Virus record (IMG/VR): IMGVR_UViG_3300045972_000138
Coordinates: 62,001-126,000 of that record
Direction: 5' to 3' (one strand)
Length of the DNA stretch: 64,000 nt
Shown: in pieces, positions 4,657-19,009 of the stretch
How the letters are laid out: the number at the start of each line of letters is the position of its first letter
Numbering within the stretch: the stretch's first letter is position 1
Position numbers and translations under genes: made by a program
Notes under the pieces: model-generated
Databases searched by the model: none
What the model saw: only the letters and a program-made list of their open reading frames with translations
Told to the model about the DNA's origin: nothing

Positions 4657-4659
4657 TAT

Positions 4660-5604: not shown

Positions 5605-5686
5605 TACACCCACTCAAGTACCGGCAGATTGGACTGAAGAGGAAGAAGAAGCCTGGCACGATTTGGAGGATAAGAAAAAAGGTTGA
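5597..5686 (+). CDS. Small acidic peptide (29 aa), not in supplied ORF track
   Basis: RBS AAGGA; MNDTPTQVPADWTEEEEEAWHDLEDKKKG; overlaps upstream stop. Confidence 0.5.
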   Translation: MNDTPTQVPADWTEEEEEAWHDLEDKKKG

Positions 5687-5711
5687 CCGATTTTAGCCTT
5701 TACATTAAAAT
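5683..5711 (+). promoter_or_regulatory. sigma70-type promoter with 11-bp inverted repeat flanking -10
   Basis: TTGACC-17-TAAAAT; TTTAGCCTTTA (5692-5702) / TAAAGGCTAAA (5711-5721). Confidence 0.65.
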
Positions 5712-5730
5712 AAAGGCTAAATACTTTTAC

Positions 5731-5753
5731 GCAATAGAGATAGACTCAGTTGC
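5731..5753 (+). promoter_or_regulatory. 5'UTR hairpin with AUAGA loop (copy 1)
   Basis: GCAAU-A-GAG-AUAGA-CUC-A-GUUGC; shares TAGAGATAGACT with 8088-8099. Confidence 0.5.
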
Positions 5754-5778
5754 ACTTAACTTTACATAGGATTTATGT

Positions 5779-6150
5779 ATGACAACAAAAACTAAGCAAT
5801 CTGCTCTCGAGCAGTACCGTAACACTTACTCTGGTAAGGCTCTGTTACAAAAACATTCCCTTACAGAAACTGGCCTTTGGCGCATTCGCGGAGAAGATCC
5901 GAATTGCGATTTTGGTGGCCATCACTACCAGCCAGATCTTGGCGTAGTTGAAGGCACATTAAAAGACATTATCGATTACGCTGTGGGCCTCAAGAACTTT
6001 TGGACTTGGGGAGGCGGTGGCGATATTTCGTTGGTTGAAGTCAAGAAGATTGATCCACAAGCCAACAAGCGTATTGCAGAACTTCGCAAGGAATCGGAAG
6101 ATCTGCAAGCTCGTCTCAAAGAAATCAACACTGAATTGAAGGGAGCATAA
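5779..6150 (+). CDS. Hypothetical protein with C-terminal coiled coil
   Basis: RBS AGGA downstream of promoter; ORF track. Confidence 0.7.
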   Translation: MTTKTKQSALEQYRNTYSGKALLQKHSLTETGLWRIRGEDPNCDFGGHHYQPDLGVVEGTLKDIIDYAVGLKNFWTWGGGGDISLVEVKKIDPQANKRIAELRKESEDLQARLKEINTELKGA

Positions 6151-6151
6151 T

Positions 6152-6490
6152 ATGCCTTGCAGAGACTACTACGACGATCATCCCGAAGCATACTTCAAAG
6201 ATATCAAAGAACCCGCGTTGAAGAAGCAAATTGCATTTGCAGAATCCGCACTGTGCCAAACACTTGCTGCATTGGAAATTGCACATACAGATATGGCAAG
6301 TCCCGCAGAATTTTACGACCTAATTAACTTTAAAGAAGCAGGTATTACAAAGGTGGAACTAAAGAAATGGCATAAGGAACATAAGGTACTTGATGCTAAA
6401 CACCGCAAAGAAGAATCTGAAAAGAATCTACGTGCAACTGCACTTGCAAAATTAACAGCCGAAGAACGTAAAGCATTGGGAGTAAAATAA
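6152..6490 (+). CDS. Hypothetical protein
   Basis: RBS GGAG; translationally coupled. Confidence 0.7.
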   Translation: MPCRDYYDDHPEAYFKDIKEPALKKQIAFAESALCQTLAALEIAHTDMASPAEFYDLINFKEAGITKVELKKWHKEHKVLDAKHRKEESEKNLRATALAKLTAEERKALGVK

Positions 6491-7518
6491 TGTCTGATAA
6501 GAAATATGATACACTGGTTTTGATTGGGCGTTTTCAACCATTCCATACTGCTCACTTGTTGTTAGTCCAACGTGCAACCGCACTTGCTAACAAGGTTGTA
6601 TTTATTGTGGGCTCGGCCAATCAGCCGCGCACCTACAAAAATCCATTTACGTTCGAAGAACGCAGAATTATGATTTACGAAGCTACTCGCGGTATGGCTG
6701 GCCCACTTAGCTTTTATATCGAGCCAAATCCGGATAGTTTATACAACGATCAGGCGTGGGCTGTGCGTGTGCAGGCACTTGTAGGAAAACACACTAAACC
6801 CGGCGATAAGGTTGGCATTATTGGGCATAAGAAAGATCCTTCCAGTTTTTACTTGGATATGTTCCCTCAGTGGGGATTCGAGTCTGTGGAACTTCTTGAA
6901 CCATTGGATGCATCTGAGATCCGTGATTTGTACTTCAAGCGCGACATTAATATGAAATTTATTAAGCATGTTGTACCACCAACTACATATGACTTTCTTG
7001 ATGCATTTGCAGACGGTCCAGCACACGAACAAATTATCAAAGAACGCGAATTTGTGGCAAACTACAAGAAGCAATATGCGTCATTGCCGTATCCGCCAAT
7101 CTTTAGCACCGCTGACGCTGTGGTTATTTGCAGTGGTCACGTGTTGATGGTGAAGCGCCGTGCAGAACCCGGCAAGGGGTTGTGGGCATTGCCCGGTGGA
7201 TATGTAAATGCAAACACTGATCGCACCGTAGAGGATGCAATGCTACGCGAACTGCGCGAAGAGACACTAATTAAGGTGCCTGCACCAGTATTACGTGGTA
7301 GCATTGTACGTAGCAAGGTGTTTGATGCAATTGATCGTAGCCCACGTGGTCGTATTATCACTCACGCATTCTTTATTAAGTTACCCGATGGTGAACTGCC
7401 AAAAGTAAAAGGTGCAGACGATGCCGAAAAAGCAAAGTGGGTACCTATTGCAAGCGTAAAGAGTGATGAATGCTTTGAAGATCACTTCGAAATTTTGCAA
7501 CACTTTTTAGGAGCATAA
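6490..7518 (+). CDS. nadM: Bifunctional NMN adenylyltransferase / ADP-ribose Nudix hydrolase (NadM-Nudix, NatV-like)
   Basis: IGRFQPFHTAH (HxxH), GSAN..RT.KNPF, Nudix box GG......AMLRELREET, DRSPRGR, FEDH. Confidence 0.92.
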   Translation: MSDKKYDTLVLIGRFQPFHTAHLLLVQRATALANKVVFIVGSANQPRTYKNPFTFEERRIMIYEATRGMAGPLSFYIEPNPDSLYNDQAWAVRVQALVGKHTKPGDKVGIIGHKKDPSSFYLDMFPQWGFESVELLEPLDASEIRDLYFKRDINMKFIKHVVPPTTYDFLDAFADGPAHEQIIKEREFVANYKKQYASLPYPPIFSTADAVVICSGHVLMVKRRAEPGKGLWALPGGYVNANTDRTVEDAMLRELREETLIKVPAPVLRGSIVRSKVFDAIDRSPRGRIITHAFFIKLPDGELPKVKGADDAEKAKWVPIASVKSDECFEDHFEILQHFLGA

Positions 7519-7519
7519 T

Positions 7520-7819
7520 ATGTTTATTGGACATGGTATTAGCAGGCTTAGCGACTTTGATAAGCATCCGCCAAAGTTTATTGTGGTGCAGGAATACACT
7601 GAAAGCCATATGGGTGCAAATTACGGTCCACCAGATCCACCGCCATCCATGGAAACATCCACTTACATGGGTATTCGTGGATTTAAGACTACGGACGAAG
7701 TTGCTGCGTGGATTAAGCAGGAACGAGAAAGTCCCTACAGCAAAAACAAATCATTCAAAGTATTTGCAATTGATGCAATGACTGTTAAGACTGATATTAC
7801 TGTGTCTTTAGGAGCATAA
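7520..7819 (+). CDS. Hypothetical protein
   Basis: RBS GGAG; operon packing. Confidence 0.6.
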   Translation: MFIGHGISRLSDFDKHPPKFIVVQEYTESHMGANYGPPDPPPSMETSTYMGIRGFKTTDEVAAWIKQERESPYSKNKSFKVFAIDAMTVKTDITVSLGA

Positions 7820-7820
7820 G

Positions 7821-8057
7821 GTGCATTACTATGTACATATCCAACGGTTAAATGGTAAGCACGACTATTGGGAATTGGCATATGATTTACATAACAAAGG
7901 ATTTGGAACTAGTGTGGATTATTTTCCGGGAGACGATATGCTAACGCCTATAGTCTATCCACACTTAAGATTTAACGACGAAGGAGATGCTGTTGCATTT
8001 TGTTTAGCACACGGATGCACCTACAGTACAAAAATACCGGAGAACGTTGACAAGTAA
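7821..8057 (+). CDS. Small protein of FxDxxDAxxF paralog family
   Basis: GTG start, RBS GGAG; C-terminal RFNDEGDAVAFCL. Confidence 0.6.
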   Translation: MHYYVHIQRLNGKHDYWELAYDLHNKGFGTSVDYFPGDDMLTPIVYPHLRFNDEGDAVAFCLAHGCTYSTKIPENVDK

Positions 8058-8075
8058 ATGGTTATTTGTTAAACT
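8047..8075 (+). promoter_or_regulatory. sigma70-type promoter of NAMPT
   Basis: TTGACA-17-TAAACT. Confidence 0.7.
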
Positions 8076-8085
8076 TAAAACAAGT

Positions 8086-8104
8086 CCTAGAGATAGACTT
8101 TAGG
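8086..8104 (+). promoter_or_regulatory. 5'UTR hairpin with AUAGA loop (copy 2)
   Basis: CCUAGAG-AUAGA-CUUUAGG; alternative pairing AAGUC (8082-86) / GACUU (8096-8100). Confidence 0.5.
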
Positions 8105-8129
8105 CAATTAAATTTAAAGGAACTTTAAA

Positions 8130-9560
8130 ATGAAAAACTCAATTATACTCGATACTGACAGCTACAAGGTCAGTATGTGGAAACAATACCCAGCAGGAAC
8201 TGAATATGTCTATTCTTACATCGAATCTCGTGGTGGAAAATACACTACAACAGAATTTCTCGGGGTACAGGCTCTTGCACGGTATCTTGCGACGCCGATC
8301 ACACAAGAACAAATTGATTATGCAGAAAAAATCTGGACTGCTCACGGAGAGCCTTTCAACCGCGAAGGTTGGCAATACATCCTTGATCAACATGAAGGCA
8401 AGCTTCCTCTCCGGATTTGCGCCGCCAAGGAAGGCCTTATTATTCCGACTAAAAACGTCCTCTGCACAATCGAAAATACAGATCCAAAATGCTTCTGGCT
8501 TACAACTTGGGTGGAAACAGCGGCGCTACGTGCAATCTGGTATCCTACCACTGTCGGAACTACTTCGTGGCACATTAAGCAAGAAATTCTGAACTACTTG
8601 GAGAAGAGCGGTGACCCCACTACTATTGGTTTTAAGCTTCACGATTTTGGTGCCCGCGGCGTTTCTAGCCTGGAGAGCGCTGGTATCGGGGGAGCAGCTC
8701 ACCTCGTCAATTTTATGGGTACTGACACTATGTCTGGTGTGCTCCATGTTATTGATGTATATGGCGGCGATGTTTGCGGATTCAGTATCCCAGCCGCAGA
8801 ACACAGCACCATCACAAGTTGGGGCCGAGACAACGAAGTAGACGCTTACCGCAATATGGTTAAGCAGTTTGGCGGCGATGGCAAGATTGTTGCTGTGGTC
8901 TCTGACTCGTACGACATTTACAAAGCCTGCGAAATGTGGGGAACGGAACTAAAAGATGATGTTATCAATTCTGGGGCTACTGTCGTCATCCGCCCTGACT
9001 CTGGCGACCCTGTGGTGGTTGTACCAAAAATGCTTCGCATACTGGCTGAACGTTTTGGGTTCACAGTCAATGCCAAGGGTTACAAGGTCCTTAATAATGT
9101 TCGCGTTATCTGGGGTGATGGTATTAATAGCGTTAGCCTGGGTAGCATTCTTCGGTGTGTTGTTGATGTTGCCGGCTTTTCTGCCGATAACATAGCATTT
9201 GGTATGGGTGGTGGACTGCTTCAACAATGCGATCGTGACACATTGAAGTTTGCTATGAAGTGTTCTTCGGTCGGTGTGCGCGAGATGGTATCAATTCCAG
9301 AATTGTCTACAGACAAGATGGAACTTGTATGGCGCGATGTGTTTAAAGATCCGGCAACTGATCCAGGCAAGGCTTCTAAGAAGGGCCGTGTTACATTGTG
9401 GGAAAGCGGTGGCGAGTATGAGACTGCGGTTTATCCTCTTACCCGTTGGACCGACAAAGGTACTGATGGTTGGAAGGAAGTATTGGAAACATACTTCTTG
9501 GATGGTGAAGTACAATTTACACAGACTTTTGACCAAGTACGAGCAAATAGTATGCTATAA
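8130..9560 (+). CDS. nadV: Nicotinamide phosphoribosyltransferase (NAMPT/NadV)
   Basis: TDSYK, LHDFGARG, NFMGTDT, PAAEHST, VSDSYD, VIRPDSG, FGMGGGLLQ, RDTLKFAMK. Confidence 0.93.
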   Translation: MKNSIILDTDSYKVSMWKQYPAGTEYVYSYIESRGGKYTTTEFLGVQALARYLATPITQEQIDYAEKIWTAHGEPFNREGWQYILDQHEGKLPLRICAAKEGLIIPTKNVLCTIENTDPKCFWLTTWVETAALRAIWYPTTVGTTSWHIKQEILNYLEKSGDPTTIGFKLHDFGARGVSSLESAGIGGAAHLVNFMGTDTMSGVLHVIDVYGGDVCGFSIPAAEHSTITSWGRDNEVDAYRNMVKQFGGDGKIVAVVSDSYDIYKACEMWGTELKDDVINSGATVVIRPDSGDPVVVVPKMLRILAERFGFTVNAKGYKVLNNVRVIWGDGINSVSLGSILRCVVDVAGFSADNIAFGMGGGLLQQCDRDTLKFAMKCSSVGVREMVSIPELSTDKMELVWRDVFKDPATDPGKASKKGRVTLWESGGEYETAVYPLTRWTDKGTDGWKEVLETYFLDGEVQFTQTFDQVRANSML

Positions 9561-9598
9561 AACTGGTATTTAAAAAGGTCGGTTATGTACTCCGTTTT

Positions 9599-9606
9599 GA
9601 TAAATA
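9599..9606 (+). promoter_or_regulatory. Late promoter box GATAAATA
   Basis: T4-late-like (TATAAATA) motif 35 nt upstream of prkA. Confidence 0.65.
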
Positions 9607-9641
9607 ACTGGGTATAGAATAAACAATTAGGAGCGAATTAC

Positions 9642-11582
9642 ATGGCTGACCTTTTTAAAATGCTTGCAGACGAGAAGAAGAATTTACGTCAAGAGACATA
9701 CTCGATTCAAGAGTATCTCGAGGCGTGTAAATCTGATCAACTACTATATGCCAGTTCGGCAGAGAGGATGTTAAAAGCAATTGGTGAGCCTGAGCTTGTC
9801 AATACGCACAAAGACGCACGTCTAAGCAGAATTTTCCACAACAGAACAATTAAGCGTTATCCGGCATTCCACGATTTTTACGGAATGGAAGATGCAGTTG
9901 AACGTATTGTAGGATACTTTACCCACGCTGCACAAGGCCTAGAAGAAAAGAAACAAATTCTTTATCTTTTGGGACCAGTTGGCGGCGGCAAGAGTTCTAT
10001 TGCAGAACGCCTTAAAGAATTAATCCAAAAGTTTCCAATTTATGTGCTTGCAGATAAAGACGGAAATCTTAGTCCTGTTTTTGAATCTCCATTAAACTTA
10101 TTCGGCAAAGACCAGTACGGCGCTGTACTTGAAAAAGAATATGGCATTCACAAACGTTATCTTTCCGATGTATTAAGCCCGTGGGCAATTAAGCGCCTAA
10201 AAGAATACGGTAACGATAAGACTAAATTTAAAGTTGTAAGAGTGTATCCAAGCAAGTTGGAACAAATTGGTGTTATCAAAACCGAACCAGGCGATGATAA
10301 TAATCAAGACATTAGCAACTTAGTTGGTAAAACCAATATTCGTATGTTGGAACACTTTGACCAAAACGATCCAGATAGCTACTCATTCTCCGGTGCTTTG
10401 TGCCGCGGCAATCAGGGTATTATGGAATTCGTGGAAATGTTCAAGGCTCCTATCAAAATGTTACACCCGTTGCTTACAGCAACACAGGAAGGTAACTACG
10501 TTGGTACAGAAGGTATTAGTGCTATTCCTTTCAACGGTACAGTACTTGCTCACAGCAATGAAAGCGAATGGCAGACATTTAAGAATAACAAGAATAATGA
10601 AGCTTTCATTGATCGCGTTTATGTTGTTAAGGTTCCATATTGCTTACGTATTACTGACGAGAAGAATATTTACTCTAAAATGCTAGAATCGTCTAGCTTA
10701 GGCAATGCACCGTGTGCAGCAGAGACATTGGATATTTTGTCCAAATTCTGCGTATTAACACGCCTACAAGAGCATGAGAACTCAAACGCCTTCAGCAAGA
10801 TGCGTGTGTACGATGGTGAAGCGATTAAAGATACAGATCCTAAAGCAAAGAGTCTGCAGGAATATCGTGATGCAGCAGGTGTAGATGAAGGTATGTCAGG
10901 TATTAGTACACGTTTTGCATTTAAGATTCTTTCTAAGACATTTAACTTTGATTCAGCAGAAATTGCAGCCGATCCAGTGCACCTAATGTTTGTATTGGAA
11001 GAAGCAATTAAGCAAGAACAGTTTGGCGAAGAAAAGCAAACAAAGTATATGAACTTTATCAAAGAATACTTAGCACCCAAGTATGCAGAACAGTTAAGTA
11101 ACGAAATTCAGAAAGCGTACTTAGAAAGCTACAGCGATTATGGTCAAAACTTGTTTGATCGTTATGTCGAATACGCCGATGCGTGGATACAGGAAATTGA
11201 TTACAAAGATCCAGATACTGGTAATTTATTTGATCGCGCAGTTCTTAATAAGGAACTTGAAAAGATCGAAAAGCCGGCAGGCATTGCCAATCCTAAGGAC
11301 TTCCGCAACGAAGTTGTTAACTTTGTATTGCGTGCCCGTGCTAAACATCCAGAGGGTGGTGTAAAATGGACATCTTACGAAAAACTACGCGAAGTAATTG
11401 AACGCAAGATGTTTGCAAGCACAGAAGAATTACTTCCTATTATTAGCTTTGGCGCTAAGAGCAAAGAAGATGATCAAAAGAAACACGACGAATTTGTTAA
11501 GAGGATGATGTCCAAAGGATATACTGCTATGCAAGTCAAGCGACTTGTTGAATGGCATATGAGAACTGCAAAGAGTTCCTAA
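9642..11582 (+). CDS. yeaG: PrkA/YeaG-family AAA+ serine kinase
   Basis: GPVGGGKS Walker A, EPGDDNNQDIS, GALCRGNQG..EFVEMFKAPIK, VKVPYCLR. Confidence 0.93.
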   Translation: MADLFKMLADEKKNLRQETYSIQEYLEACKSDQLLYASSAERMLKAIGEPELVNTHKDARLSRIFHNRTIKRYPAFHDFYGMEDAVERIVGYFTHAAQGLEEKKQILYLLGPVGGGKSSIAERLKELIQKFPIYVLADKDGNLSPVFESPLNLFGKDQYGAVLEKEYGIHKRYLSDVLSPWAIKRLKEYGNDKTKFKVVRVYPSKLEQIGVIKTEPGDDNNQDISNLVGKTNIRMLEHFDQNDPDSYSFSGALCRGNQGIMEFVEMFKAPIKMLHPLLTATQEGNYVGTEGISAIPFNGTVLAHSNESEWQTFKNNKNNEAFIDRVYVVKVPYCLRITDEKNIYSKMLESSSLGNAPCAAETLDILSKFCVLTRLQEHENSNAFSKMRVYDGEAIKDTDPKAKSLQEYRDAAGVDEGMSGISTRFAFKILSKTFNFDSAEIAADPVHLMFVLEEAIKQEQFGEEKQTKYMNFIKEYLAPKYAEQLSNEIQKAYLESYSDYGQNLFDRYVEYADAWIQEIDYKDPDTGNLFDRAVLNKELEKIEKPAGIANPKDFRNEVVNFVLRARAKHPEGGVKWTSYEKLREVIERKMFASTEELLPIISFGAKSKEDDQKKHDEFVKRMMSKGYTAMQVKRLVEWHMRTAKSS

Positions 11583-12856
11583 TGTCCGATTATACAATCA
11601 TCGACAGGAGAGTAAATCCTAAGGGTAAAAATCTCTCCAATAGACAACGATTCCTTGAACGTACAAAGCAGTGGGTAAAGCAAAAGGTACGTGAGAAAAG
11701 TGTGAATAGAGATATTACATCTACAGATGGTGAAAATATCTCTATTTCAAAAGATGATATTGCCGAACCACAATTTGACTACGATAGACAAAAGGGTGTA
11801 TGGGATCGTGTTTTACCTGGTAACAAGGAATTTGTCCCTGGCGACAAAATCAAGAGAGAACAGGGCGGCCAGGGTAAGGGTAAGGATGCAAGCGATCAGG
11901 GAGAAGGTACTGACGATTTTGTATTCACTATTTCAAAAGAAGAATATTTAGATATTCTATTTGAGAATTTAGAGTTACCCGATCTTATAAAGCAAAGTGA
12001 AGATGCAGCAGTCGCATTTGCTAGAAAGCGTACAGGTTTTTCAACATCCGGCAGTCCAAACAACCTAGATTTAGTAAGGAGTCTTAAGAACTCTTTAGGG
12101 CGCAGAATTGCATTAGGTCTTCCGTTAGATAAAAGAATAAAAGAAAACGAAGAATTGCTACTCACAGCAACAGAAGATGAAAAAGTTGTATTACTTGAAG
12201 AAATACAACGATTGCGTACACGCCGTGCAGCGGTAGCATATATTGATCAGGTTGATGTAAGATATAAGCGTCATTCGCAAACGCCACTTCCAAATAGTCA
12301 GGCGGTTGTATTCTGTCTCATGGATGTTTCCGGTAGTATGGGCAAAGACGAAAAAGATACAGCGAAACGATTCTTTTTATTATTGTACCTATTCCTACAA
12401 AGAAAATATTTAAAAGTAGATATTGTATTTGTACGACATACAACCGTTGCATCCGAATGTTCTGAACACGAGTTCTTTTATGGACAGGAAAGTGGTGGTA
12501 CAATTGTCAGTACCGGTGTAAAGGAAGTTAACAACATTGTTAGGGAAAGATATCCACTAGATTCCTGGAATGTTTATGTAGTGCAGGCATCTGATGGTGA
12601 TAATGTTGATAGCGATAGCAAGGCACTTACAGAAGAAGTAGAAAACTTATTACCAAAGTGCCAGTATTATGTCTATGATGAAGTATTACAGAAGAATACA
12701 TACCGCAGTGCAGGACATACAACAACTGTTTTAAGTGTTATGAAAGAGTTATCGGACCATAATGAAAATCTTGCAATAACATCAACCGACTCAGTAGAAA
12801 GCGTGCTTACAGCATTTAGAGAGATTTTTACAAAAAAGGCAAATAATGGCAAATAA
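11582..12856 (+). CDS. yeaH: YeaH/YhbH (DUF444) vWA-domain protein
   Basis: IIDRRVNPKGKNLSNRQRF, MDVSGSM MIDAS, ESGGTIVS, WNVYVVQASDGDN; start coupled to yeaG stop. Confidence 0.92.
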   Translation: MSDYTIIDRRVNPKGKNLSNRQRFLERTKQWVKQKVREKSVNRDITSTDGENISISKDDIAEPQFDYDRQKGVWDRVLPGNKEFVPGDKIKREQGGQGKGKDASDQGEGTDDFVFTISKEEYLDILFENLELPDLIKQSEDAAVAFARKRTGFSTSGSPNNLDLVRSLKNSLGRRIALGLPLDKRIKENEELLLTATEDEKVVLLEEIQRLRTRRAAVAYIDQVDVRYKRHSQTPLPNSQAVVFCLMDVSGSMGKDEKDTAKRFFLLLYLFLQRKYLKVDIVFVRHTTVASECSEHEFFYGQESGGTIVSTGVKEVNNIVRERYPLDSWNVYVVQASDGDNVDSDSKALTEEVENLLPKCQYYVYDEVLQKNTYRSAGHTTTVLSVMKELSDHNENLAITSTDSVESVLTAFREIFTKKANNGK

Positions 12857-14315
12857 GCACCTATTCGAAGGTTCGGAGTGGGATTTTAGTTTAGTAGATG
12901 CAGCAATGAAAGAATTTGATCTAATTGCACCAGAATTAAAACTAGACATATACCCTAATCAACTTGAAGTTATAACAAGCGAACAAATGCTTGATGCATA
13001 TGCAAGCGTTGGCCTACCTGTAATGTATAAGCATTGGAGTTTTGGTAAGCAATTCTCTAGAGAAAGCGATAATTACAAAAAGGGTAAATCGGGATTGGCA
13101 TACGAGATGGTGCTTAACACTAATCCTTGTATCAATTTCTTAATGGAAGAAAATACAGCAACTACGCAGGTACTTGTACTTGCACATGCTGCCTACGGAC
13201 ATAATCACGTATTCAAAAATAACTATATGTTCAAGCAATGGACAGATGCAGGTAGCATTGTAGATTATCTTATTTTTGCAAGAAACTTTATAACAGAGTG
13301 CGAAGAGAAGTATGGATTTAAGGAAGTTGAAAAGACTTTAGATGCTGCTCATGCTCTTATGAATTTTGGTGTGGATAGATATAATAGACCAGCCAAGCTT
13401 AGTTTTGCTAAGGAACACGAGAAGTCTGAAGAGCGTAAGAAATATTTGCAAGAGCAAGTAAATGAACTTTGGAGAACAGTTCCTGCAGGAAAGGCTAAAC
13501 CAGAAGAACCTAAGAAGTTTCTTAAAGAACCAGAAGAGAATATACTTTATTTCCTGGAAAAGAAATCTCCAAAGCTAGAAGTATGGCAGCGCGAAATATT
13601 ACGCATTGTCCGTAAGGTAGCACAATACTTCGAACCACAGCGTTGCACTAAAGTTCTTAACGAAGGTTGGGCAAGTTTTACACATTATTATATGATGAAT
13701 AGATTGCACGACAAAGGTTTGTTATCTGATGGCTCTATGTTAGAATTCTTTGCATTGCATAGCAATGTGCTATATCAACCGGAATTTGATAGTAAATACT
13801 ACAGCGGATTTAACCCTTATTACCTAGGATTTAACATCTTCTCTGAGATTAGACGTGTGTGCGAGAAGCCTACAGCAGAAGATGAAGAATATTTCCCGGA
13901 ATTGTGCGGAACTCCCTGGGTAGATGCGTGTATTGATGCTGTAGCTAATTACAGAGATGAAAGTTTTATTAGACAATTCTTGACACCTGCATTATGCAGA
14001 AAGATGGGATTATTCTTATTGAATGATGACAGCAAGAGTGATTACAATGTTGCTGCTATTCACGATGCATCAGGTTTCAAACGAATTAGAAAAGCATTAG
14101 CTGATCAATACCTAACTGAAAACTATATGCCTAAGATTGAAATTGTGGATGTTGATCAACACAATACTCGTAAGCTAACTTTAATGTATTACAAAAATGC
14201 TAACAAGGAACTAATGGGCAAATCTGCAAGTCGTGTATTAAGACACATCGAATATCTTTGGGGATTCACAACCGAAATGGTTGACCAAGACGGCAAACAC
14301 TACAACGTTCTGTAA
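12846..14315 (+). CDS. ycgB: SpoVR/YcgB-family protein
   Basis: GLPVMYKHWSFGKQF, LAYEMVLN, HAAYGHNHVFKNN, TKVLNEGWASFTH. Confidence 0.93.
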   Translation: MANKHLFEGSEWDFSLVDAAMKEFDLIAPELKLDIYPNQLEVITSEQMLDAYASVGLPVMYKHWSFGKQFSRESDNYKKGKSGLAYEMVLNTNPCINFLMEENTATTQVLVLAHAAYGHNHVFKNNYMFKQWTDAGSIVDYLIFARNFITECEEKYGFKEVEKTLDAAHALMNFGVDRYNRPAKLSFAKEHEKSEERKKYLQEQVNELWRTVPAGKAKPEEPKKFLKEPEENILYFLEKKSPKLEVWQREILRIVRKVAQYFEPQRCTKVLNEGWASFTHYYMMNRLHDKGLLSDGSMLEFFALHSNVLYQPEFDSKYYSGFNPYYLGFNIFSEIRRVCEKPTAEDEEYFPELCGTPWVDACIDAVANYRDESFIRQFLTPALCRKMGLFLLNDDSKSDYNVAAIHDASGFKRIRKALADQYLTENYMPKIEIVDVDQHNTRKLTLMYYKNANKELMGKSASRVLRHIEYLWGFTTEMVDQDGKHYNVL

Positions 14316-14316
14316 C

Positions 14317-15219
14317 TTATTTCTGTTTAAGTTTATCTAACATTTCTTGTGCCTTTTCAACACTAATTAGATATCTGCCTGTCCTGTTAGGATCGGCAGC
14401 TTTCTGCAAAAATTCTACACTAAGTCCCGACGTCTTTGGTCTTGACTCTGGTGCATCATTAGTTCCTGCAGGTATACCACCCGTTTCACCAGGCAAATAA
14501 TTATTTACGCCACCGCTTTGTTGCTTACGAGATTGTAATGCTGCCATTGCATCGTTTGCACTAATCATAGGCCTAGATACAGAACCATCAACTACACCTT
14601 GCAAATATTGGGTATTCATATTATCACCGGGTGCAGCTTGAGCCCCACCTGCACCTAAAGCACCTAGCCCAACCATTGCTGCACCTGCTAGGTTACTTTT
14701 CCAACCCTCTGCTACCATAGCTGCTAATCTTTCTTCATAACTTTCTGTTGTAGAATGCTTATGTGTTATCTTCATAGCCTTTTCTGCTCTACGATCGACT
14801 TTCTTTTGTGTATGTGGATTAGAATAATACTCGTCGGGCTTAACACCAGATCTATACTTATGCATTGCAGCCGCAACACTCTTTTCTGTACCAGGGCTTA
14901 ATTCGTTTAATTTCTGCTCTGAATGCTTATGTGTTATCTTCATAGCTTTTTCTGCTCTACGATCAACTTTCTTTTGCGTATGCGGATTTGAATAATACTC
15001 ATCTGGTTTAACACCGGATCTGTACTTGTGCATTGCGGCGGCAACATTCTTTTCTGTGCCTGCACTTAATTCGTTAACTTGAACTGTCTGTCCTTTCCAC
15101 TTATCGTGTACATCATTTAAAATATTTTCATAACTAACGTCTTGAGCAGGAGCGCAACGATTAAGTCCACCCATCATACCTTCGACAATTTGTTCTGCTA
15201 AGAGTTTAATGTGGTCCAT
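14317..15219 (-). CDS. Late, putative head-internal protein with internal tandem duplication
   Basis: Start reassigned to ATG 15219 (RBS AAGGA, late box 15243-15250); two ~52-aa repeats. Confidence 0.65.
   Translation of the reverse strand: MDHIKLLAEQIVEGMMGGLNRCAPAQDVSYENILNDVHDKWKGQTVQVNELSAGTEKNVAAAMHKYRSGVKPDEYYSNPHTQKKVDRRAEKAMKITHKHSEQKLNELSPGTEKSVAAAMHKYRSGVKPDEYYSNPHTQKKVDRRAEKAMKITHKHSTTESYEERLAAMVAEGWKSNLAGAAMVGLGALGAGGAQAAPGDNMNTQYLQGVVDGSVSRPMISANDAMAALQSRKQQSGGVNNYLPGETGGIPAGTNDAPESRPKTSGLSVEFLQKAADPNRTGRYLISVEKAQEMLDKLKQK
14753..15075. repeat. Two ~155-bp direct repeats (14753-14907, 14921-15075), period 168 bp
   Basis: Encode NELS(A/P)GTEK(N/S)VAAAMHKYRSGVKPDEYYSNPHTQKKVDRRAEKAMKITHKHS twice; mostly synonymous differences. 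Confidence 0.9.
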
Positions 15220-15242
15220 AATAAATCCTTTAATATTTCTAT

Positions 15243-15250
15243 TATTTATC
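15243..15250 (-). promoter_or_regulatory. Late promoter box GATAAATA
   Basis: TATTTATC on + strand, upstream of 15219 start. Confidence 0.6.
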
Positions 15251-15263
15251 AAAATATTATAGG

Positions 15264-15307
15264 TTGACTTCACAATGTAGTTTATGGTATAATAAAACGG
15301 ATAAATA
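15264..15307 (+). promoter_or_regulatory. Tandem sigma70-type promoter and late box for hydrolase gene
   Basis: TTGACT-18-TATAAT (15264-15293) then GATAAATA (15300-15307). Confidence 0.55.
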
Positions 15308-15350
15308 TATGTCCCGCTGTGAGTTTTAGGCGGGCTTTTAGGAGAGAAAG

Positions 15351-15875
15351 ATGATAACAGCAAAATTATTGCTTGTTTATCTTCTTACTTCAACCGACGT
15401 AAGTGGTTTATCCACAATTGACACATCACAAGTAGATCCGCAAGAAGCCTATTGCTTGGCGGAAAATATTTATTACGAAGCGAGAAGTGAAGATATTCAG
15501 GGACAATTTGCAGTTGCTTCTGTTACCCTTAATCGTGCGAGCAATCCACGATTTCCTAGTACTGTGTGCGGCGTAGTTAAACAGACAGCCAGGTCACGCA
15601 TTACCGACAAACTCGTATGTGCCTTTTCATGGTATTGTGACAACGAGAAGAAGGGGAGAGAAATACCTGTCAATAATAGAGACGGATCTATAAACCAACG
15701 TGTTTATGATCAGTTCCAAAGAGCCAGTATTGTAGCGATTACTATGCTTGCAGGAAACGTCAAAGATATAACCAAGGGTGCCACGCACTTTCATAATCCG
15801 TTTATAAGCGATCCTGCTTGGAAACACGAGATGGTTAAAACGATAAGTGTGGGACACCACGACTTCTATAGATAA
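15351..15875 (+). CDS. Cell wall hydrolase, SleB/Hydrolase_2 family
   Basis: CLAENIYYEARSE, GQFAVASVTLNR, FPSTVCGVV, FSWYCD, GATHFH, GHHDFY. Confidence 0.88.
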   Translation: MITAKLLLVYLLTSTDVSGLSTIDTSQVDPQEAYCLAENIYYEARSEDIQGQFAVASVTLNRASNPRFPSTVCGVVKQTARSRITDKLVCAFSWYCDNEKKGREIPVNNRDGSINQRVYDQFQRASIVAITMLAGNVKDITKGATHFHNPFISDPAWKHEMVKTISVGHHDFYR

Positions 15876-15883
15876 TCTATAGT

Positions 15884-15905
15884 ACGGGGCTTCGGCCCCG
15901 TTTTT
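15884..15905 (+). terminator. Intrinsic terminator
   Basis: ACGGGGC-TTCG-GCCCCGT followed by T tract. Confidence 0.85.
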
Positions 15906-15918
15906 GTTTCGAAGAGTT

Positions 15919-15947
15919 TTGACATTTCTAGAGTTTCGTAGTATACT
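15919..15947 (+). promoter_or_regulatory. sigma70-type promoter of thyX
   Basis: TTGACA-17-TATACT. Confidence 0.75.
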
Positions 15948-15970
15948 TAACAATTAAGTTAAGGAGAGCT

Positions 15971-16657
15971 ATGGAAAATAATTTTAGAAAAGTTTTAGAT
16001 CACGGTCACGTTCGTTTAGTTGAGAGTATGGGCAGTGACCTGTCAATTTCTCGTAATGCACGAGTATCTTATGATGCAGAATGGCGTGCAGGTGAAGATG
16101 AAGGTAAGGATGCAAAGTTACTTAACTATCTTCTTAAGAATAAGCACACAAGCCCATTTGAATCGTGTGTCTTTACATTCGATGTAAAAGCACCAATCTT
16201 TATTTTTAGACAGTGGCATCGTCACCGTACCTGGAGTTTCAACGAAATCTCTGCACGCTACGCCGAATTGCCGGAAGAATTCTATGTCCCCGAACTAGAT
16301 CAAATTACAACGCAATCAGCAACAAATAAGCAGATGCGCACTGATACAATTCACCCCGACGCTGCAAAGCACGCTGAGGCCATCTTTAGGGCAAATTCGG
16401 CATCTTTTGCAGTATATAAACAGATGATTTTAGACGGTGTACCACGCGAGCTTGCACGCTCTGTATTGCCAGTAGGAACATACAGTCATATGTTTGCTAC
16501 AGTAGATTTACACAATCTATTTCACTTCCTTAAGCTTCGTTTGCATTCGCACGCACAATATGAAATCCGTGTTTATGCAGAAGCCATGCTAGAATTAATC
16601 GAGCCTATTGTTCCTGTTTCTACGGCAGCATTTAGAGAACACATCTTAGGAGCGTAA
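15971..16657 (+). CDS. thyX: Flavin-dependent thymidylate synthase
   Basis: HTSPFES, RQWHRHRTWSFNEISARY (RHRx7S motif), HAQYEIR. Confidence 0.93.
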   Translation: MENNFRKVLDHGHVRLVESMGSDLSISRNARVSYDAEWRAGEDEGKDAKLLNYLLKNKHTSPFESCVFTFDVKAPIFIFRQWHRHRTWSFNEISARYAELPEEFYVPELDQITTQSATNKQMRTDTIHPDAAKHAEAIFRANSASFAVYKQMILDGVPRELARSVLPVGTYSHMFATVDLHNLFHFLKLRLHSHAQYEIRVYAEAMLELIEPIVPVSTAAFREHILGA

Positions 16658-16658
16658 T

Positions 16659-16982
16659 ATGCTTAATCTTGTTGACGATATAGAAAAAATTAAAATAATC
16701 GATAAGGCACTAAATGCGCTGACTGTTGATGATGTCAAAGATATGTTTGGCTCGGACATTATCGTCGACAAGCTCAAAGGAGTACAGGATAGAAAAGGTC
16801 CTGTACTCCAGATAGTGGAAGAAATGCAACGAATGGCAAACGAAGAAATGATGCTTCGTACAGAATGTCAAATGTTAAAAGCTGATATTCAGATACTTGT
16901 ACGTTGCCTTAACAAGGGGTTGGGAGACCCATCTATATCTGGCGACTTTAGTAGCCTAAAACAGCGGCATGGCATTTACTAA
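16659..16982 (+). CDS. Hypothetical protein
   Basis: RBS GGAG; ORF track. Confidence 0.6.
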   Translation: MLNLVDDIEKIKIIDKALNALTVDDVKDMFGSDIIVDKLKGVQDRKGPVLQIVEEMQRMANEEMMLRTECQMLKADIQILVRCLNKGLGDPSISGDFSSLKQRHGIY

Positions 16983-16996
16983 ATGCTAAATACTAC

Positions 16997-17047
16997 TGTT
17001 ACACAATGGTAACAAAAATCAAAAACAAACCATCACAAAGGAAGGTT
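16997..17047 (+). promoter_or_regulatory. Two-hairpin folE leader; second hairpin sequesters the RBS
   Basis: UGUUAC-ACAAUG-GUAACA and AACCAUC-ACAAAG-GAAGGUU. Confidence 0.45.
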
Positions 17048-17051
17048 ATCT

Positions 17052-17729
17052 ATGTCATATAATAAGACAAAATGCGACCCAGAATTGGGCAAACAAGTAC
17101 ACAAACATTTATTAGAAATGGGTGTTGAGACTCCAGTATACGAAAGCGGACAAGACCGTAAAGATAAAATCGATGTTATCGAAAAACACTTTGCAGTCAT
17201 TATGGAAACACTTGGATTAGATTTAACAGACGATAGCTTAATGGATACACCAAGACGTGTAGCTAAGATGTATGTCAATGAAATCTTCTGGGGGTTGGAC
17301 TACGAAGCATTTCCAAAATGCACAACAGTAGACAATAAAATGAAATACGACGAAATGGTCGTCGAGAGAGGTGTAAATGTACAATCTAACTGCGAACATC
17401 ACTTTGTTGTCATTGATGGTGTTGCAACGGTCGGTTATATTCCTAAGCAAAAGGTATTGGGCCTTAGTAAGATTAATCGCATCGTAGAATACTTTAGTAA
17501 GCGACCACAAATCCAAGAACGCCTTACAGAACAAATTTATCACGCATTACAATTTATTCTGGAAACAGATAATATTGGTGTTGTTATTCACGCACAGCAT
17601 TACTGTGTTAAGTCGCGTGGTGTTGAAGATACAGGTTCTAATACGGTAACAAGTAAGTTAGGTGGAGTATTTAAAATTGATCCTAATGTTAGAACGGAGT
17701 TTATGCGACTAGTATCTGTGAGTGCATAA
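17052..17729 (+). CDS. folE: GTP cyclohydrolase I
   Basis: TPRRVAKMY, SNCEHHFV, GLSKINRIV, RPQIQERLT, HYCVKSRGV. Confidence 0.95.
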   Translation: MSYNKTKCDPELGKQVHKHLLEMGVETPVYESGQDRKDKIDVIEKHFAVIMETLGLDLTDDSLMDTPRRVAKMYVNEIFWGLDYEAFPKCTTVDNKMKYDEMVVERGVNVQSNCEHHFVVIDGVATVGYIPKQKVLGLSKINRIVEYFSKRPQIQERLTEQIYHALQFILETDNIGVVIHAQHYCVKSRGVEDTGSNTVTSKLGGVFKIDPNVRTEFMRLVSVSA

Positions 17730-18025
17730 TGAGTCAATCAGGATTAACACCATACCAAGACGAATTGCTAGAAATATTAGCAGAAGAATGTGCAGAAGTT
17801 GTGCAAGAAAAATCTAAGATATTTAGATTTGGTTGCGACCAAGAAAGTTGGCACATTAGAGGAAAATCACACGCCGAATGCCTAGAACAGGAACTCGGTG
17901 ATGTCCTCGCAATGATAGACTTATTGTTGTATAGTGGCATAGGTATATCACATGCTGGCTTAGAAGCAGCAAAGGCAAAAAAGACAGAAAAAGTCCTTAA
18001 TTGGATGACACATAAAAAGGATTAA
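17729..18025 (+). CDS. MazG-like NTP pyrophosphohydrolase
   Basis: LAEECAEVVQE...LEQELGDVLAMI. Confidence 0.75.
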   Translation: MSQSGLTPYQDELLEILAEECAEVVQEKSKIFRFGCDQESWHIRGKSHAECLEQELGDVLAMIDLLLYSGIGISHAGLEAAKAKKTEKVLNWMTHKKD

Positions 18026-18026
18026 T

Positions 18027-18524
18027 ATGACACCAGTATCTTATAAATTTACAAGCACAAAAGAGTACATTGACGCATTTCCATGTGCTTACAGACAATG
18101 GCGCAGCGATTCGCATTGTAACCTAATTCACGGTTATTCATTTAGTATGAAGTTTTATTTTGGTACAAATGATTTGGATGTACGTAATTGGGCGGCAGAT
18201 TACGGCGGACTTAAAGAATTGAAGAAGATTTTAGAATCGCAGTTTGATCATTCGTTAATTGTGGCGCAAGATGATCCTGAAATGGAAACGTTCAACTTGC
18301 TAAGTGAAAAGGGCATGGCAAAGATTGTTGTCCTGCCGCGCTTAGGTTGCGAATCACTTGCTGATATGCTATACAAGTATGTTAACGGTGTTTATATTCC
18401 AGAAATGTGGGGCAAAGGCGAAGCAGAGCGTCTGTGGTGCTACAAGGTTGAAGTTCGCGAAACACAAGCAAATATGGCGTATCGTGAAGGTCACCGTGAA
18501 TGGAATGAAGATTTGCTTGCATAA
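18027..18524 (+). CDS. queD: 6-carboxy/pyruvoyl-tetrahydropterin synthase (QueD/PTPS)
   Basis: HCNLIHGYS, DYGGLK, FDHSLIVAQDDP, VEVRET. Confidence 0.85.
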   Translation: MTPVSYKFTSTKEYIDAFPCAYRQWRSDSHCNLIHGYSFSMKFYFGTNDLDVRNWAADYGGLKELKKILESQFDHSLIVAQDDPEMETFNLLSEKGMAKIVVLPRLGCESLADMLYKYVNGVYIPEMWGKGEAERLWCYKVEVRETQANMAYREGHREWNEDLLA

Positions 18525-18697
18525 TGGAACTTGATAATGTCTTAATGGAAAAAGTTCTTACTCCTAGCAAAGAAGAGCAAACTTTCCTTACTTTACAAGG
18601 CAAGTGCCCACACAATGGCGGTTGGCGCCATTTGGGGCACGGTCATAATGATGACTGTTACGAATGTATATTATGCAGAGAAACAAAGTGGTGGTAA
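18524..18697 (+). CDS. Small Cys/His-rich, putative Zn-binding protein (57 aa), not in ORF track
   Basis: TAATG coupling with queD; CPH...GHGHNDDCYECILC. Confidence 0.6.
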   Translation: MELDNVLMEKVLTPSKEEQTFLTLQGKCPHNGGWRHLGHGHNDDCYECILCRETKWW

Positions 18698-18698
18698 T

Positions 18699-18992
18699 AT
18701 GGCAAAACATATGACGGAAAAAGACTGGGCTGCAATTCGACTTAAACATTCAAAAATGACTAAAGAAGAGGCAAAGGCATTTTTGCGCGAAGTAATGGGG
18801 CCTCCTACTAAGGAATTAGAAGGCCAAGATAAGAAAGAGGCAATGCTTATATTATCTTTCTTAGAACCATTCGAGGAGTCGAATAATCAGCATTCTTGGA
18901 CAAGCTCTTATATGGTGGGTGAAACTCGGTATGATGTTACTTCCTGGCCAGGGAGCAATGATCCTACTATAGCTGAATATTTGCCGGAATAA
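18699..18992 (+). CDS. Hypothetical protein
   Basis: Start reassigned to ATG 18699 directly after previous stop. Confidence 0.6.
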   Translation: MAKHMTEKDWAAIRLKHSKMTKEEAKAFLREVMGPPTKELEGQDKKEAMLILSFLEPFEESNNQHSWTSSYMVGETRYDVTSWPGSNDPTIAEYLPE

Positions 18993-18997
18993 AACAC

Positions 18998-19005
18998 GAT
19001 AAATA
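18998..19005 (+). promoter_or_regulatory. Late promoter box GATAAATA
   Basis: 4 nt upstream of ATG 19010 (near-leaderless transcript). Confidence 0.55.
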
Positions 19006-19009
19006 CTAT

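What the first reader, a model, noticed from the sequence alone, without database searches (positions are those of the whole stretch)
9599..14315. Intact phage-encoded PrkA/YeaG-YeaH-SpoVR operon under a late promoter
Seen: all three genes are full length and overlap-coupled, with Walker A and vWA MIDAS (DVSGS) intact, and sit downstream of GATAAATA. Established: this triad is a conserved bacterial stress/stationary-phase module (yeaGH-ycgB in E. coli; prkA-yhbH-spoVR in Bacillus) with an AAA+ plus vWA architecture and poorly understood function. Inference: late expression suggests a role in virion assembly chaperoning or in rewiring host dormancy and nitrogen-starvation signalling. A phage copy is a tractable model for the system.
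Basis: partly seen in the sequence, partly recalled or inferred. Interest (0 to 1): 0.62.

Follow-up and report, generated by a model that had tools for sequence, protein, structure and literature searches.

The report
Jumbo-phage PrkA–YeaH–SpoVR late operon
An uncultured jumbo phage of roughly 360 kb carries an intact, strongly conserved copy of the bacterial starvation module PrkA/YeaG–YeaH–SpoVR behind the same promoter motif as its tail and lysis genes, so it may switch on host-type bulk protein recycling late in infection.

Summary
Window 9642-14315 (+) encodes full-length PrkA/YeaG (646 aa), YeaH/DUF444 (424 aa from the likely start at 11582) and SpoVR/YcgB (489 aa). All three pass NCBIfam equivalog cut-offs, keep the Walker A and MIDAS motifs, and overlap by 1 and 11 nt.

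GATAAATA at 9599 is a real promoter-like motif. The 237.6-kb record has 49 copies on the + strand and 7 on the - strand, against about 13 expected per strand. It precedes the tail sheath, tail tube, adaptor, virion-protein and endolysin-like genes. "Late-type" is therefore supported, but expression was not measured.

The record is a jumbo myophage fragment, not a chimera. The triad's composition matches the phage's own genes, and synteny recurs in two other contigs.

The triad falls in a virus-only clade of 41 sequences, apart from Alpha- and Gammaproteobacteria, and is under strong purifying selection. It is nevertheless accessory: four close relatives with the same gene order lack it.

Phage copies were already annotated in phiYS40 (record dated 2006, from memory) and RsoM2USA (2021).

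My best reading uses a 2026 report that E. coli YeaG drives starvation-induced bulk proteolysis. On that reading, the phage uncouples this machine from host stress control to feed late virion synthesis.

- A predicted YeaH–SpoVR complex (ipSAE 0.77; best control 0.00).
- A zincin-like SpoVR fold that lacks HExxH.

The parts
9599..9606 (+). GATAAATA, a late-type promoter motif (7 of 8 bases of the T4 late consensus TATAAATA)
   Evidence: Searches give its enrichment, strand bias and position 15-45 nt before start codons. Searches show the same motif before the sheath, tube, adaptor, virion-protein and endolysin-like genes. It is conserved before PrkA in L005 and L275.
9629..9633 (+). AGGAG ribosome-binding site of PrkA
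9642..11582 (+). PrkA/YeaG (SpdA) homolog, 646 aa: AAA+ N-domain plus PrkA C-domain
   Evidence: Pfam. NCBIfam PRK15455, 1156 bits against a cut-off of 576. 68% identical to enterobacterial YeaG. PDB 9xip matches at E 4e-52.
9972..9998 (+). Walker A motif GPVGGGKSS (residues 111-119)
11582..12856 (+). YeaH/YhbH (DUF444), 424 aa: N-terminal arm plus vWA domain. The start overlaps the PrkA stop by 1 nt; an alternative upstream ATG lies at 11552.
   Evidence: Invariant residues are listed.
12323..12337 (+). MIDAS motif DVSGS of the vWA domain (D248, S250 and S252 are invariant in 45 homologs)
12846..14315 (+). SpoVR/YcgB homolog, 489 aa; its start overlaps the YeaH stop by 11 nt
   Evidence: Model; fold matches.
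13185..13208 (+). SpoVR motif HAAYGHNH (H114 and H119 invariant). Judged from the alignment ranges, it lies on the helix that matches the zincin HExxH helix.
   Evidence: The register is inferred from ranges and was not read residue by residue.
14317..15216 (-). Convergent unknown ORF of about 299 aa with its own GATAAATA at 15243-15250 (-). It ends 1 nt after the SpoVR stop, so it bounds the operon.
8130..9560 (+). NAMPT (NadV-like), the left border of the variable slot that holds the triad
15300..15875 (+). GATAAATA (15300-15307) plus an endolysin-like Hydrolase_2 gene (15351-15875), the right border of the variable slot

Best explanation
This is a functional, phage-adapted copy of the bacterial three-protein module PrkA/YeaG(SpdA)-YeaH-SpoVR(YcgB). 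It is carried as an accessory cassette by an uncultured jumbo myophage of about 360 kb.

Shown:
- All three genes are intact and are canonical family members.
- They are translationally coupled.
- They are under strong purifying selection in phages.
- They belong to a virus-specific clade.
- They stand behind the promoter motif that this phage uses for its virion and lysis genes.

Inferred:
- The three proteins act as one ATP-driven machine. PrkA is the AAA+ motor. YeaH clamps SpoVR with its N-terminal arm and leaves its vWA/MIDAS domain free. SpoVR has a zincin-like fold.
- The machine carries out the function recently assigned to E. coli YeaG: broad degradation of stable cytoplasmic proteins, which yields amino acids and ATP.
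- By replacing the host's stress-sigma control with a late-type phage promoter, the phage would switch this recycling on when demand for virion protein peaks. That would help a large, slow phage in nutrient-poor hosts.

My odds:
- About 0.9 for identity and functionality.
- About 0.75 for late-class transcription.
- About 0.4 for bulk proteolysis as the purpose.
For: Identity:
-, with motifs.

Promoter class:
- Searches give the statistics.
- Searches show the motif before the sheath (phrog_10581, 9e-233), tube, adaptor Ad2, four virion structural proteins, an endolysin-like gene and Hsp20.
- A TAAATA core lies at -80 to -15 of PrkA in 16 of 40 viral-clade loci, against about 3% expected and 3 of 80 bacterial loci.
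- The three triad-bearing relatives that are at least 90% complete encode gp55-like sigma, and their sheath genes follow AATAAATA, CATAAATA or GCTAAATA.

Selection:
- Between the window and L005, synonymous sites are saturated (pS at or above 0.75) while pN is 0.04, 0.15 and 0.105.
- Unsaturated phage pairs give dN/dS of 0.05-0.14.

Viral clade:
- FastTree on 104 rows gives support 99; IQ-TREE on 48 rows gives SH-aLRT 99.

Composition:
- It matches the phage's own genes.

One machine:
- The operon is contiguous in nearly all bacterial and viral loci, and the YeaH/SpoVR overlap has a median of -4 nt.
- yeaG, yeaH and ycgB show cofitness above r 0.7 in six bacteria (bioRxiv 10.1101/072470).
- The predicted YeaH-SpoVR complex scores ipSAE 0.77, with the best of 3 controls at 0.00. 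That mark was reached by 58 of 80 solved complexes and 2 of 110 mismatched pairs. The runs share at least 87% of contacts and partner pLDDT is at least 80.

Function:
- YeaG is required for starvation-induced global proteolysis in E. coli (PMC13684143).
- SpoVR's fold matches are almost all zincin metallopeptidases: DUF885 at Z 11.4/11.1/10.0, M1, M3, M32 and thermolysin.

Context:
- Neighbouring genes cover recycling and proteostasis: RNR, NadV/NatV, ThyX, ClpX-like, Hsp20 and Lon-like.
Against: - No expression data exist.
- No gp55 homolog was found in the held 62% of the genome.
- There is no terminator between NAMPT and PrkA, so read-through from upstream is possible.
- The motif also precedes tRNAs and a homing endonuclease, so it is not purely structural.
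- The SPD role is shown only for E. coli YeaG. YeaH and YcgB were not examined in that paper.
- It is unknown whether YeaG itself is the protease.
- SpoVR lacks HExxH, and its Z scores of 8-11 lie within the range the tool warns can arise by chance for helical models. Foldseek and a PDB profile search found nothing.
- Close relatives manage without the triad.
- The host is unknown.
Confidence: 0.45

Rival explanations
1. Signalling kinase module. PrkA would act as a Ser/Thr kinase that, with YeaH and SpoVR, reprograms host dormancy or nitrogen-starvation regulation rather than degrading proteins.
For: - YeaG is described as a kinase needed for adaptation to sustained nitrogen starvation (PMC4664914).
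- Price et al. propose a conserved signalling pathway on the basis of cofitness.
- The PrkA C-domain is fully conserved.
Against: - B. subtilis PrkA showed no autophosphorylation or kinase activity. Its C-terminal P-loop is degenerate, and its function depends on the Walker A ATPase/protease activity (PMC9512850).
- The E. coli yeaG deletion phenotype is loss of bulk proteolysis.
- Late timing leaves little time for transcriptional rewiring.
Confidence: 0.2
2. Virion-assembly chaperone. An AAA+/vWA pair would work like MoxR-vWA maturation systems to help fold or assemble capsid or tail parts.
For: - The promoter class is the same as that of the structural genes.
- The AAA+ plus vWA/MIDAS architecture fits.
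- Hsp20 and a ClpX-like gene also sit under the motif.
Against: - Four close relatives with 69-72% identical sheaths and identical flanking synteny lack the triad.
- The proteins remain equivalogs of host proteins, with PrkA 68% identical to enterobacterial YeaG, and show no phage-specific domains.
- PrkA is not a MoxR-family ATPase.
Confidence: 0.1
3. Packaged effectors. The proteins would be made late, loaded into the capsid and ejected into the next host for immediate takeover.
For: Late-type promoter without an obvious structural role. From my own knowledge, late-made packaged enzymes are known in T4 (Alt) and in jumbo phages.
Against: - No targeting signal or processing site was examined.
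- The ten most abundant RsoM2USA virion bands did not include ORF28-30, though only the major bands were analysed (PMC8504454).
- Three large proteins, about 1,560 aa in all, would have to be packed.
Confidence: 0.07
4. Artefact or passenger: host DNA in a chimeric contig, or a recently captured neutral cassette.
For: - The module is typical of Pseudomonadota.
- The record Enterobacter phage LAU1 simply begins with host yeaG-yeaH at a prophage edge.
- The cassette is accessory.
Against: - GC 0.384 and GC3 0.28-0.36 lie within the phage's own range: genome GC 0.408, GC3 interquartile range 0.293-0.378.
- A phage promoter motif and leader are conserved in three contigs.
- The triad sits in a virus-only clade with deep branches.
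- Purifying selection is strong.
- The best bacterial identity is only 70%.
Confidence: 0.03

Closest known systems
E. coli YeaG (SpdA)-YeaH and YcgB; the contiguous prkA-yeaH-spoVR operon of most Pseudomonadota
   Same: - Same three families at equivalog level, same lengths and domain order, and same gene order.
- The tight YeaH/SpoVR overlap is the same.
- PrkA is 66-70% identical to its bacterial counterparts.
   Different: - It is encoded by a jumbo phage.
- It forms a separate virus-only clade.
- A phage late-type GATAAATA motif stands where E. coli has RpoS/NtrC control.
- The genes are packed more tightly: the PrkA-YeaH gap is -1 nt here, against a bacterial median of 33.5 nt.
Bacillus subtilis PrkA-YhbH and SpoVR (sporulation)
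   Same: Same families. PrkA's Walker A, which is needed for its ATPase and protease activity, is conserved.
   Different: The relationship is distant: TIGR02877 spore_yhbH scores 199.6 bits against a cut-off of 468. Nothing in this genome's context suggests sporulation.
Thermus phage phiYS40 ORFs 56-59, and Ralstonia jumbo phage RsoM2USA ORFs 30-29-28
   Same: Both are phage-borne sets of DUF444, SpoVR and PrkA. RsoM2USA has the same gene order, and phiYS40 was annotated 'SpoVR' and 'serine kinase'.
   Different: - phiYS40 has another order (DUF444-SpoVR-unknown-PrkA) and only 27-28% identity.
- RsoM2USA is 55% identical and sits on a long branch outside the viral clade.
- Neither paper nor record treats the three genes as one system.
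T4-type late transcription (TATAAATA, gp55/gp33/gp45)
   Same: - It is an A/T-rich octamer with a TAAATA core, and no -35 element was noted.
- It lies 15-45 nt before start codons of structural genes.
- gp55-like sigma is present in three triad-bearing relatives that are at least 90% complete.
   Different: - The first base is G. TATAAATA itself is not enriched: 10 on + and 5 on -, against 16 expected.
- gp55 was not found in the held fragment.
MoxR-vWA AAA+ chaperone pairs (RavA-ViaA, CbbQ-CbbO, NorQ-NorD), cited from my own knowledge
   Same: An adjacent AAA+ ATPase and a vWA/MIDAS protein.
   Different: PrkA is its own AAA+ family with a large C-domain. A third partner, SpoVR, is predicted to bind the non-vWA arm of YeaH.

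Membership tests
PrkA/YeaG (SpdA) | Full-length AAA_PrkA (PF08298) plus the PrkA C-domain (PF06798) | tested here: met
   residues 21-382 and 385-638, matching the profiles end to end.
PrkA/YeaG (SpdA) | NCBIfam equivalog PRK15455 above its curated cut-off | tested here: met
   1156.1 bits against 576.
PrkA/YeaG (SpdA) | Walker A lysine (K108 in B. subtilis is needed for ATPase and protease activity) | tested here: met
   GPVGGGKSS at residues 111-119. The requirement comes from PMC9512850.
PrkA/YeaG (SpdA) | ATP-dependent proteolysis, or support of starvation proteolysis | not testable with these tools
   Needs biochemistry or genetics.
YeaH/YhbH (DUF444) | Full-length DUF444, and an equivalog model above its cut-off | tested here: met
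   (3e-141). NF003707, 494.5 bits against 396.
YeaH/YhbH (DUF444) | vWA MIDAS motif DxSxS | tested here: met
   DVSGS is present, and D248, S250 and S252 are invariant in 45 sequences.
SpoVR/YcgB | SpoVR (PF04293) plus SpoVR_C (PF24755), and equivalog PRK11767 above its cut-off | tested here: met
   735.1 bits against 679.
prkA-yeaH-spoVR operon | Three genes contiguous on one strand in this order | tested here: met
   The same arrangement holds in most of 160 viral and bacterial loci.
prkA-yeaH-spoVR operon | Control by host stress regulators (RpoS or NtrC in E. coli) | tested here: inconclusive
   A phage GATAAATA motif stands upstream, and the only sigma-70-like site nearby matches 9 of 12 positions. 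Sigma-54 and sigma-S sites were not scanned.
T4-type late promoter | A/T-rich -10-type octamer close to TATAAATA | tested here: met
   GATAAATA matches 7 of 8 bases and is enriched and strand-biased.
T4-type late promoter | Precedes virion structural and lysis genes | tested here: met
T4-type late promoter | gp55-type late sigma encoded by the phage | tested here: inconclusive
   Not found in the 62%-complete record. Found in G006, G007 and G009, which are more distant triad-bearing relatives.
Zincin metallopeptidase (considered for SpoVR) | Zincin fold | tested here: inconclusive
   VIA-align top hits are almost all zincins: Z 11.4 (rmsd 4.2, 192 aligned) for the whole model and Z 8.0 for the core alone. 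These values lie within the tool's chance range for helical models. Foldseek found nothing.
Zincin metallopeptidase (considered for SpoVR) | HExxH zinc-binding and catalytic motif | tested here: not met
   The matching helix carries HAAYGH: there is no Glu and the spacing differs. SpoVR is therefore not filed as a peptidase.
MoxR-vWA chaperone pair | MoxR-class AAA+ ATPase | tested here: not met
   Only the PrkA-specific AAA model matches.
Known anti-phage defence systems | Match to PADLOC models | tested here: not met
   None of the three proteins gives a hit.

The most novel reading that the evidence does not exclude
The triad is a three-part ATP-dependent protein-degradation machine: a PrkA motor, a YeaH adaptor whose N-terminal arm clamps SpoVR, and SpoVR as a non-canonical zincin-fold subunit. 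A deep, virus-specific lineage of this machine circulates among jumbo and mega phages of 320-580 kb as a late-expressed cassette. The cassette turns the host proteome into amino acids and ATP for virion production. This would be a viral 'autophagy-like' auxiliary function, and the phage versions would be free of host regulation.
Probability: 0.3. Interest if true: 0.8.

Novelty: new member of a known kind. Interest (0 to 1): 0.55.

Why it matters
The YeaG-YeaH-YcgB module is among the most widespread poorly understood bacterial stress systems. Only in October 2026 was YeaG linked to starvation-induced global proteolysis (PMC13684143).

Together these suggest that the three proteins are a self-contained unit that works without host-specific regulators. 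They also suggest that large, slow phages gain from it.

If the recycling reading holds, it adds a new class of auxiliary function, bulk proteome recycling, to phage biology. It would also give a route to dissect the machine through two culturable carriers, RsoM2USA and phiYS40, or by expressing the phage genes in E. coli.

The predicted YeaH-SpoVR interface and the zincin-like SpoVR fold are concrete, testable leads for the bacterial system too.

Tried and rejected
- Megablast of the region against GenBank phages found no match.
- T4 gp55, as a protein and as two PHROG profiles, was not found in the held record. The record is 62% complete, so this is not evidence of absence.
There is therefore no expression or habitat evidence, and read laying was not used.
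- PADLOC gave no hits for the triad.
- SpoVR gave nothing with Foldseek against the PDB or with a profile search of PDB sequences. The atlas search returned only SpoVR clusters.
- Folding the SpoVR core alone lowered Z from 11.4 to 8.0 rather than raising it.
- No paper in the held library links SpoVR to metallopeptidases.
- The idea that the triad is core to this phage group is rejected. Relatives G001-G004, found through the sheath, lack it at the syntenic slot.
- The idea that all 'phage' PrkA hits are truly phage-borne is rejected for Enterobacter phage LAU1, which shows host yeaGH at the record's edge.
- The large representative protein search was not used, because family scans and the word search had settled identity.
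- Only table 11 was used.
- Only the YeaH-SpoVR pair was tested by complex prediction, which allows one job. PrkA-YeaH is untested.
Full report
**What is there**

Window 9642-14315 (+) holds three tightly packed ORFs. All family checks are consistent.
- Pfam matches each ORF end to end. PrkA has AAA_PrkA plus the PrkA C-domain, YeaH has DUF444, and SpoVR has SpoVR plus SpoVR_C.
- NCBIfam places each above the curated cut-off of an equivalog model: PRK15455 at 1156 vs 576 bits, PRK05325.1-2 at 494.5 vs 396, and PRK11767 at 735 vs 679.
- Walker A (GPVGGGKSS, 9972-9998) and MIDAS (DVSGS, 12323-12337) are intact.

The likely YeaH start is the ATG at 11582, which shares one base with the PrkA stop (TAATG). 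The ATG at 11552 would add ten residues that the DUF444 profile and the homologs lack. The SpoVR start overlaps the YeaH stop by 11 nt.

A convergent gene ends 1 nt after the SpoVR stop. No terminator-like site lies on the + strand within the scanned stretch, 9300-15500.

**The promoter motif**

GATAAATA at 9599-9606 lies 35 nt before the PrkA ATG, with AGGAG between them. The motif is not a chance hit.
- The window has 16 copies against 4.6 expected, and 0 of 100 shuffles reach 16.
- The 237.6-kb record has 49 copies on + and 7 on -, against about 13 expected per strand. The canonical T4 octamer TATAAATA is not enriched.
- Most sites sit 15-45 nt before an RBS and ATG.
- 34 of 56 sites are within 80 nt of a crudely called start, where about 5% of positions qualify.

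Genes that directly follow the motif include:
- the tail sheath (phrog_10581, 9e-233), tail tube, head-tail adaptor and three virion structural proteins;
- a further virion structural protein, an endolysin-like hydrolase and Hsp20.

The motif therefore marks the transcription class of the virion and lysis genes. It also precedes a homing endonuclease and some tRNAs.

A T4 gp55-type sigma was not found in the held record, which CheckV rates 62% complete. It is present in all three triad-bearing relatives that are at least 90% complete. Their sheath genes follow AATAAATA, CATAAATA or GCTAAATA.

**What the genome is**

The window is bases 62001-126000 of an IMG/VR virus record. The record carries a myovirus sheath and tube, 17 tRNAs and many host-like genes:
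- RNR;
- NadV plus a NatV-like NMNAT-NUDIX protein;
- ThyX;
- FolE and QueD;
- ClpX-like, Lon-like and Hsp20 proteins.

A 358.5-kb ENA contig encodes a 90% identical PrkA in the same RNR...NatV-NAMPT-PrkA-YeaH-SpoVR order, with the same GATAAATA leader. The phage is therefore a jumbo phage of about 360 kb.

The triad's GC (0.384) and GC3 (0.28-0.36) fall within the phage's own range. A chimera with host DNA is excluded for practical purposes.

**Relatives and evolution**

The spread of relatives is wide.
- The word search found dozens of metagenomic PrkA proteins 75-94% identical, several on contigs of 300-512 kb.
- IMG/VR holds at least 126 relatives.
- The best bacterial genomes reach only 70% identity, in Gamma- and Alphaproteobacteria.
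- The three genes are contiguous in nearly every locus, viral or bacterial. The exception is the Enterobacteriaceae, where SpoVR lies elsewhere.

On a concatenated tree of the three proteins, the window and 40 IMG/VR sequences form one group with support 99 (FastTree, 104 rows). The same group appears as one side of a branch with SH-aLRT 99 in IQ-TREE on 48 rows. It stands apart from the Gamma and Alpha clades. RsoM2USA sits elsewhere on a long branch. The trees are unrooted, and bacterial sampling was limited to the 80 best matches.

Large members of this group are genuine related myophages. Records of 322, 342, 415 and 578 kb carry sheaths 43-46% identical to the window's, and the 578-kb record has terminal repeats.

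Selection is strongly purifying.
- Between the window and L005, synonymous sites are saturated while pN is 0.04, 0.15 and 0.105.
- Unsaturated phage pairs give dN/dS of 0.05-0.14.

The triad is nevertheless accessory.
- Four contigs with 69-72% identical sheaths share the order NatV-NAMPT-[1.7-3.1 kb]-endolysin-like-...-ClpX.
- They have no PrkA. The slot holds other cargo, such as a saccharopine-dehydrogenase-like gene.

The triad thus moves, or is lost, as a unit among jumbo phages.

**How it probably works**

The literature held here gives four points.
[quoted passage not shown] - E. coli YeaG, renamed SpdA, is required for RpoS-controlled, largely non-specific degradation of stable cytoplasmic proteins. 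This degradation supplies amino acids and ATP during carbon starvation (PMC13684143).
- A PrkA-family structure exists in the PDB: 9xip, matching at E 4e-52.

*First lead: a predicted YeaH-SpoVR complex.*
- It scores ipSAE 0.77, with the best of 3 controls at 0.00.
- That mark was reached by 58 of 80 solved complexes and 2 of 110 mismatched pairs.
- The runs share at least 87% of contacts, and partner pLDDT is at least 80.
- I supplied my own alignments, so the calibration counts hold only roughly.
- The interface joins the conserved N-terminal 116 residues of YeaH to SpoVR, including a SpoVR stretch that is poorly modelled on its own.
- The vWA/MIDAS domain of YeaH is left free.

*Second lead: the SpoVR fold.*
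- The SpoVR model has pLDDT 78.6.
- In a Foldseek-independent search, its matches are almost exclusively zincin metallopeptidase folds: DUF885 at Z 11.4, 11.1 and 10.0, followed by M1, M3, M32, thermolysin and LasB.
- The core domain folded alone gives the same families at a top Z of 8.0.
- Judged from the aligned ranges, the invariant HAAYGH helix falls on the HExxH helix of thermolysin and LasB.
- The catalytic Glu is missing, the spacing differs, and these Z values can arise by chance for helical proteins.
- SpoVR is therefore zincin-like at best and is not filed as a peptidase.

My reading is that the phage carries the complete starvation-proteolysis unit and has replaced host stress control with its own late-class promoter. 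That would release amino acids and ATP when virion synthesis peaks. The purpose is an inference. The rivals are a signalling kinase, an assembly chaperone and packaged effectors. They are weighed in their own sections.

**Novelty**

Phage-borne copies were already on record.
- phiYS40 carries DUF444, SpoVR, an unknown protein and a 'serine kinase'.
- RsoM2USA ORFs 30 and 28 are listed as PrkA and SpoVR in its paper's table.
- spoVR was noted as the most abundant 'sporulation' auxiliary gene in oxygen-minimum-zone viromes (PMC8940887).

None of these treats the three genes as one system. This is a new member of a known kind. The added observations are the virus-specific clade, the accessory slot, the late-type promoter and the two structural leads.

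Only table 11 was used.

Noticed in passing
window 15243-15250 (-) and 15300-15307 (+): Two GATAAATA motifs stand back to back about 50 nt apart. They drive an unknown 299-aa gene (14317-15216, -) and the endolysin-like gene (15351-15875, +), so this looks like a divergent late-type promoter pair.
   Followed up: partly
window 9607-9641; L005 about 5951-6000; L275 9957-10000: A GGTATAGAAT element 4-8 nt downstream of the PrkA GATAAATA is conserved in all three related contigs, although synonymous sites in the genes are saturated. It was not seen after other GATAAATA sites. It may be a leader or a regulatory element.
   Followed up: no
window 9561-15350, against L264 6024-8240, L265 6320-7980, L266 4756-7842 and L267 6464-9541: The slot between NAMPT and the endolysin-like gene is a cargo hot spot. 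Relatives carry a saccharopine-dehydrogenase-like gene (363-370 aa) and unknown 590-617-aa genes there instead of the triad.
   Followed up: partly
window 6490-7518 and 8130-9560: A NatV-like NMN adenylyltransferase-NUDIX fusion and NAMPT (NadV) together form a complete phage NAD+ salvage pair.
   Followed up: no
window 17052-17729 and 18027-18524: A GTP cyclohydrolase (FolE-like) and a QueD-like 6-pyruvoyl-tetrahydropterin synthase suggest 7-deazaguanine synthesis, and possibly DNA modification.
   Followed up: no
window 20667-21890, 23843-24328 and 48219-50435: A ClpX-like AAA+ protein with a zinc finger and Hsp20 each have GATAAATA upstream. A 738-aa Lon-like ATP-dependent protease is also present. 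The phage therefore carries an unusually rich proteostasis set.
   Followed up: partly
L006, L007 and L008, between PrkA and YeaH (about 7940-8900): In the next-closest viral group a 730-970 bp insert separates PrkA from YeaH. In L007 and L008 it matches G000 ORFs, one of which (190587-191282) is a homing endonuclease. A mobile endonuclease may have invaded the operon.
   Followed up: partly
L106 (record titled Nocardioides marinus) and L115 (Leisingera sp.): The triad of the Actinomycetota-labelled assembly is nearly identical to that of a Roseobacteraceae genome, with end branches of 0.016 and 0.02. The cause is probably contamination or mislabelling of that assembly, or else a very recent transfer.
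   Followed up: no
L002 (Enterobacter phage LAU1, MN688132.1, 1-3308): The record starts with yeaG-yeaH, which are 68% identical to the window's PrkA, next to tail genes. This looks like host flank at a prophage edge rather than phage cargo.
   Followed up: no
L082 9482-11080 and L124 7035-8330: There is one in-frame stop each, in a viral SpoVR (L082) and a Vibrio YeaH (L124), as extracted. The cause may be a pseudogene, a sequencing error or my ORF boundaries.
   Followed up: no
G000 1-20000 and 175000-180000 (L165, L171): 17 tRNA genes lie in two clusters, and several are directly preceded by GATAAATA, for example tRNA-Arg at G000 17505.
   Followed up: no
G010 (IMG/VR record of 278,859 bp, rated 100% complete; L070): It carries the triad within the viral clade but gives no match to this phage's sheath. 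It may be a different morphotype or a very divergent tail.
   Followed up: no
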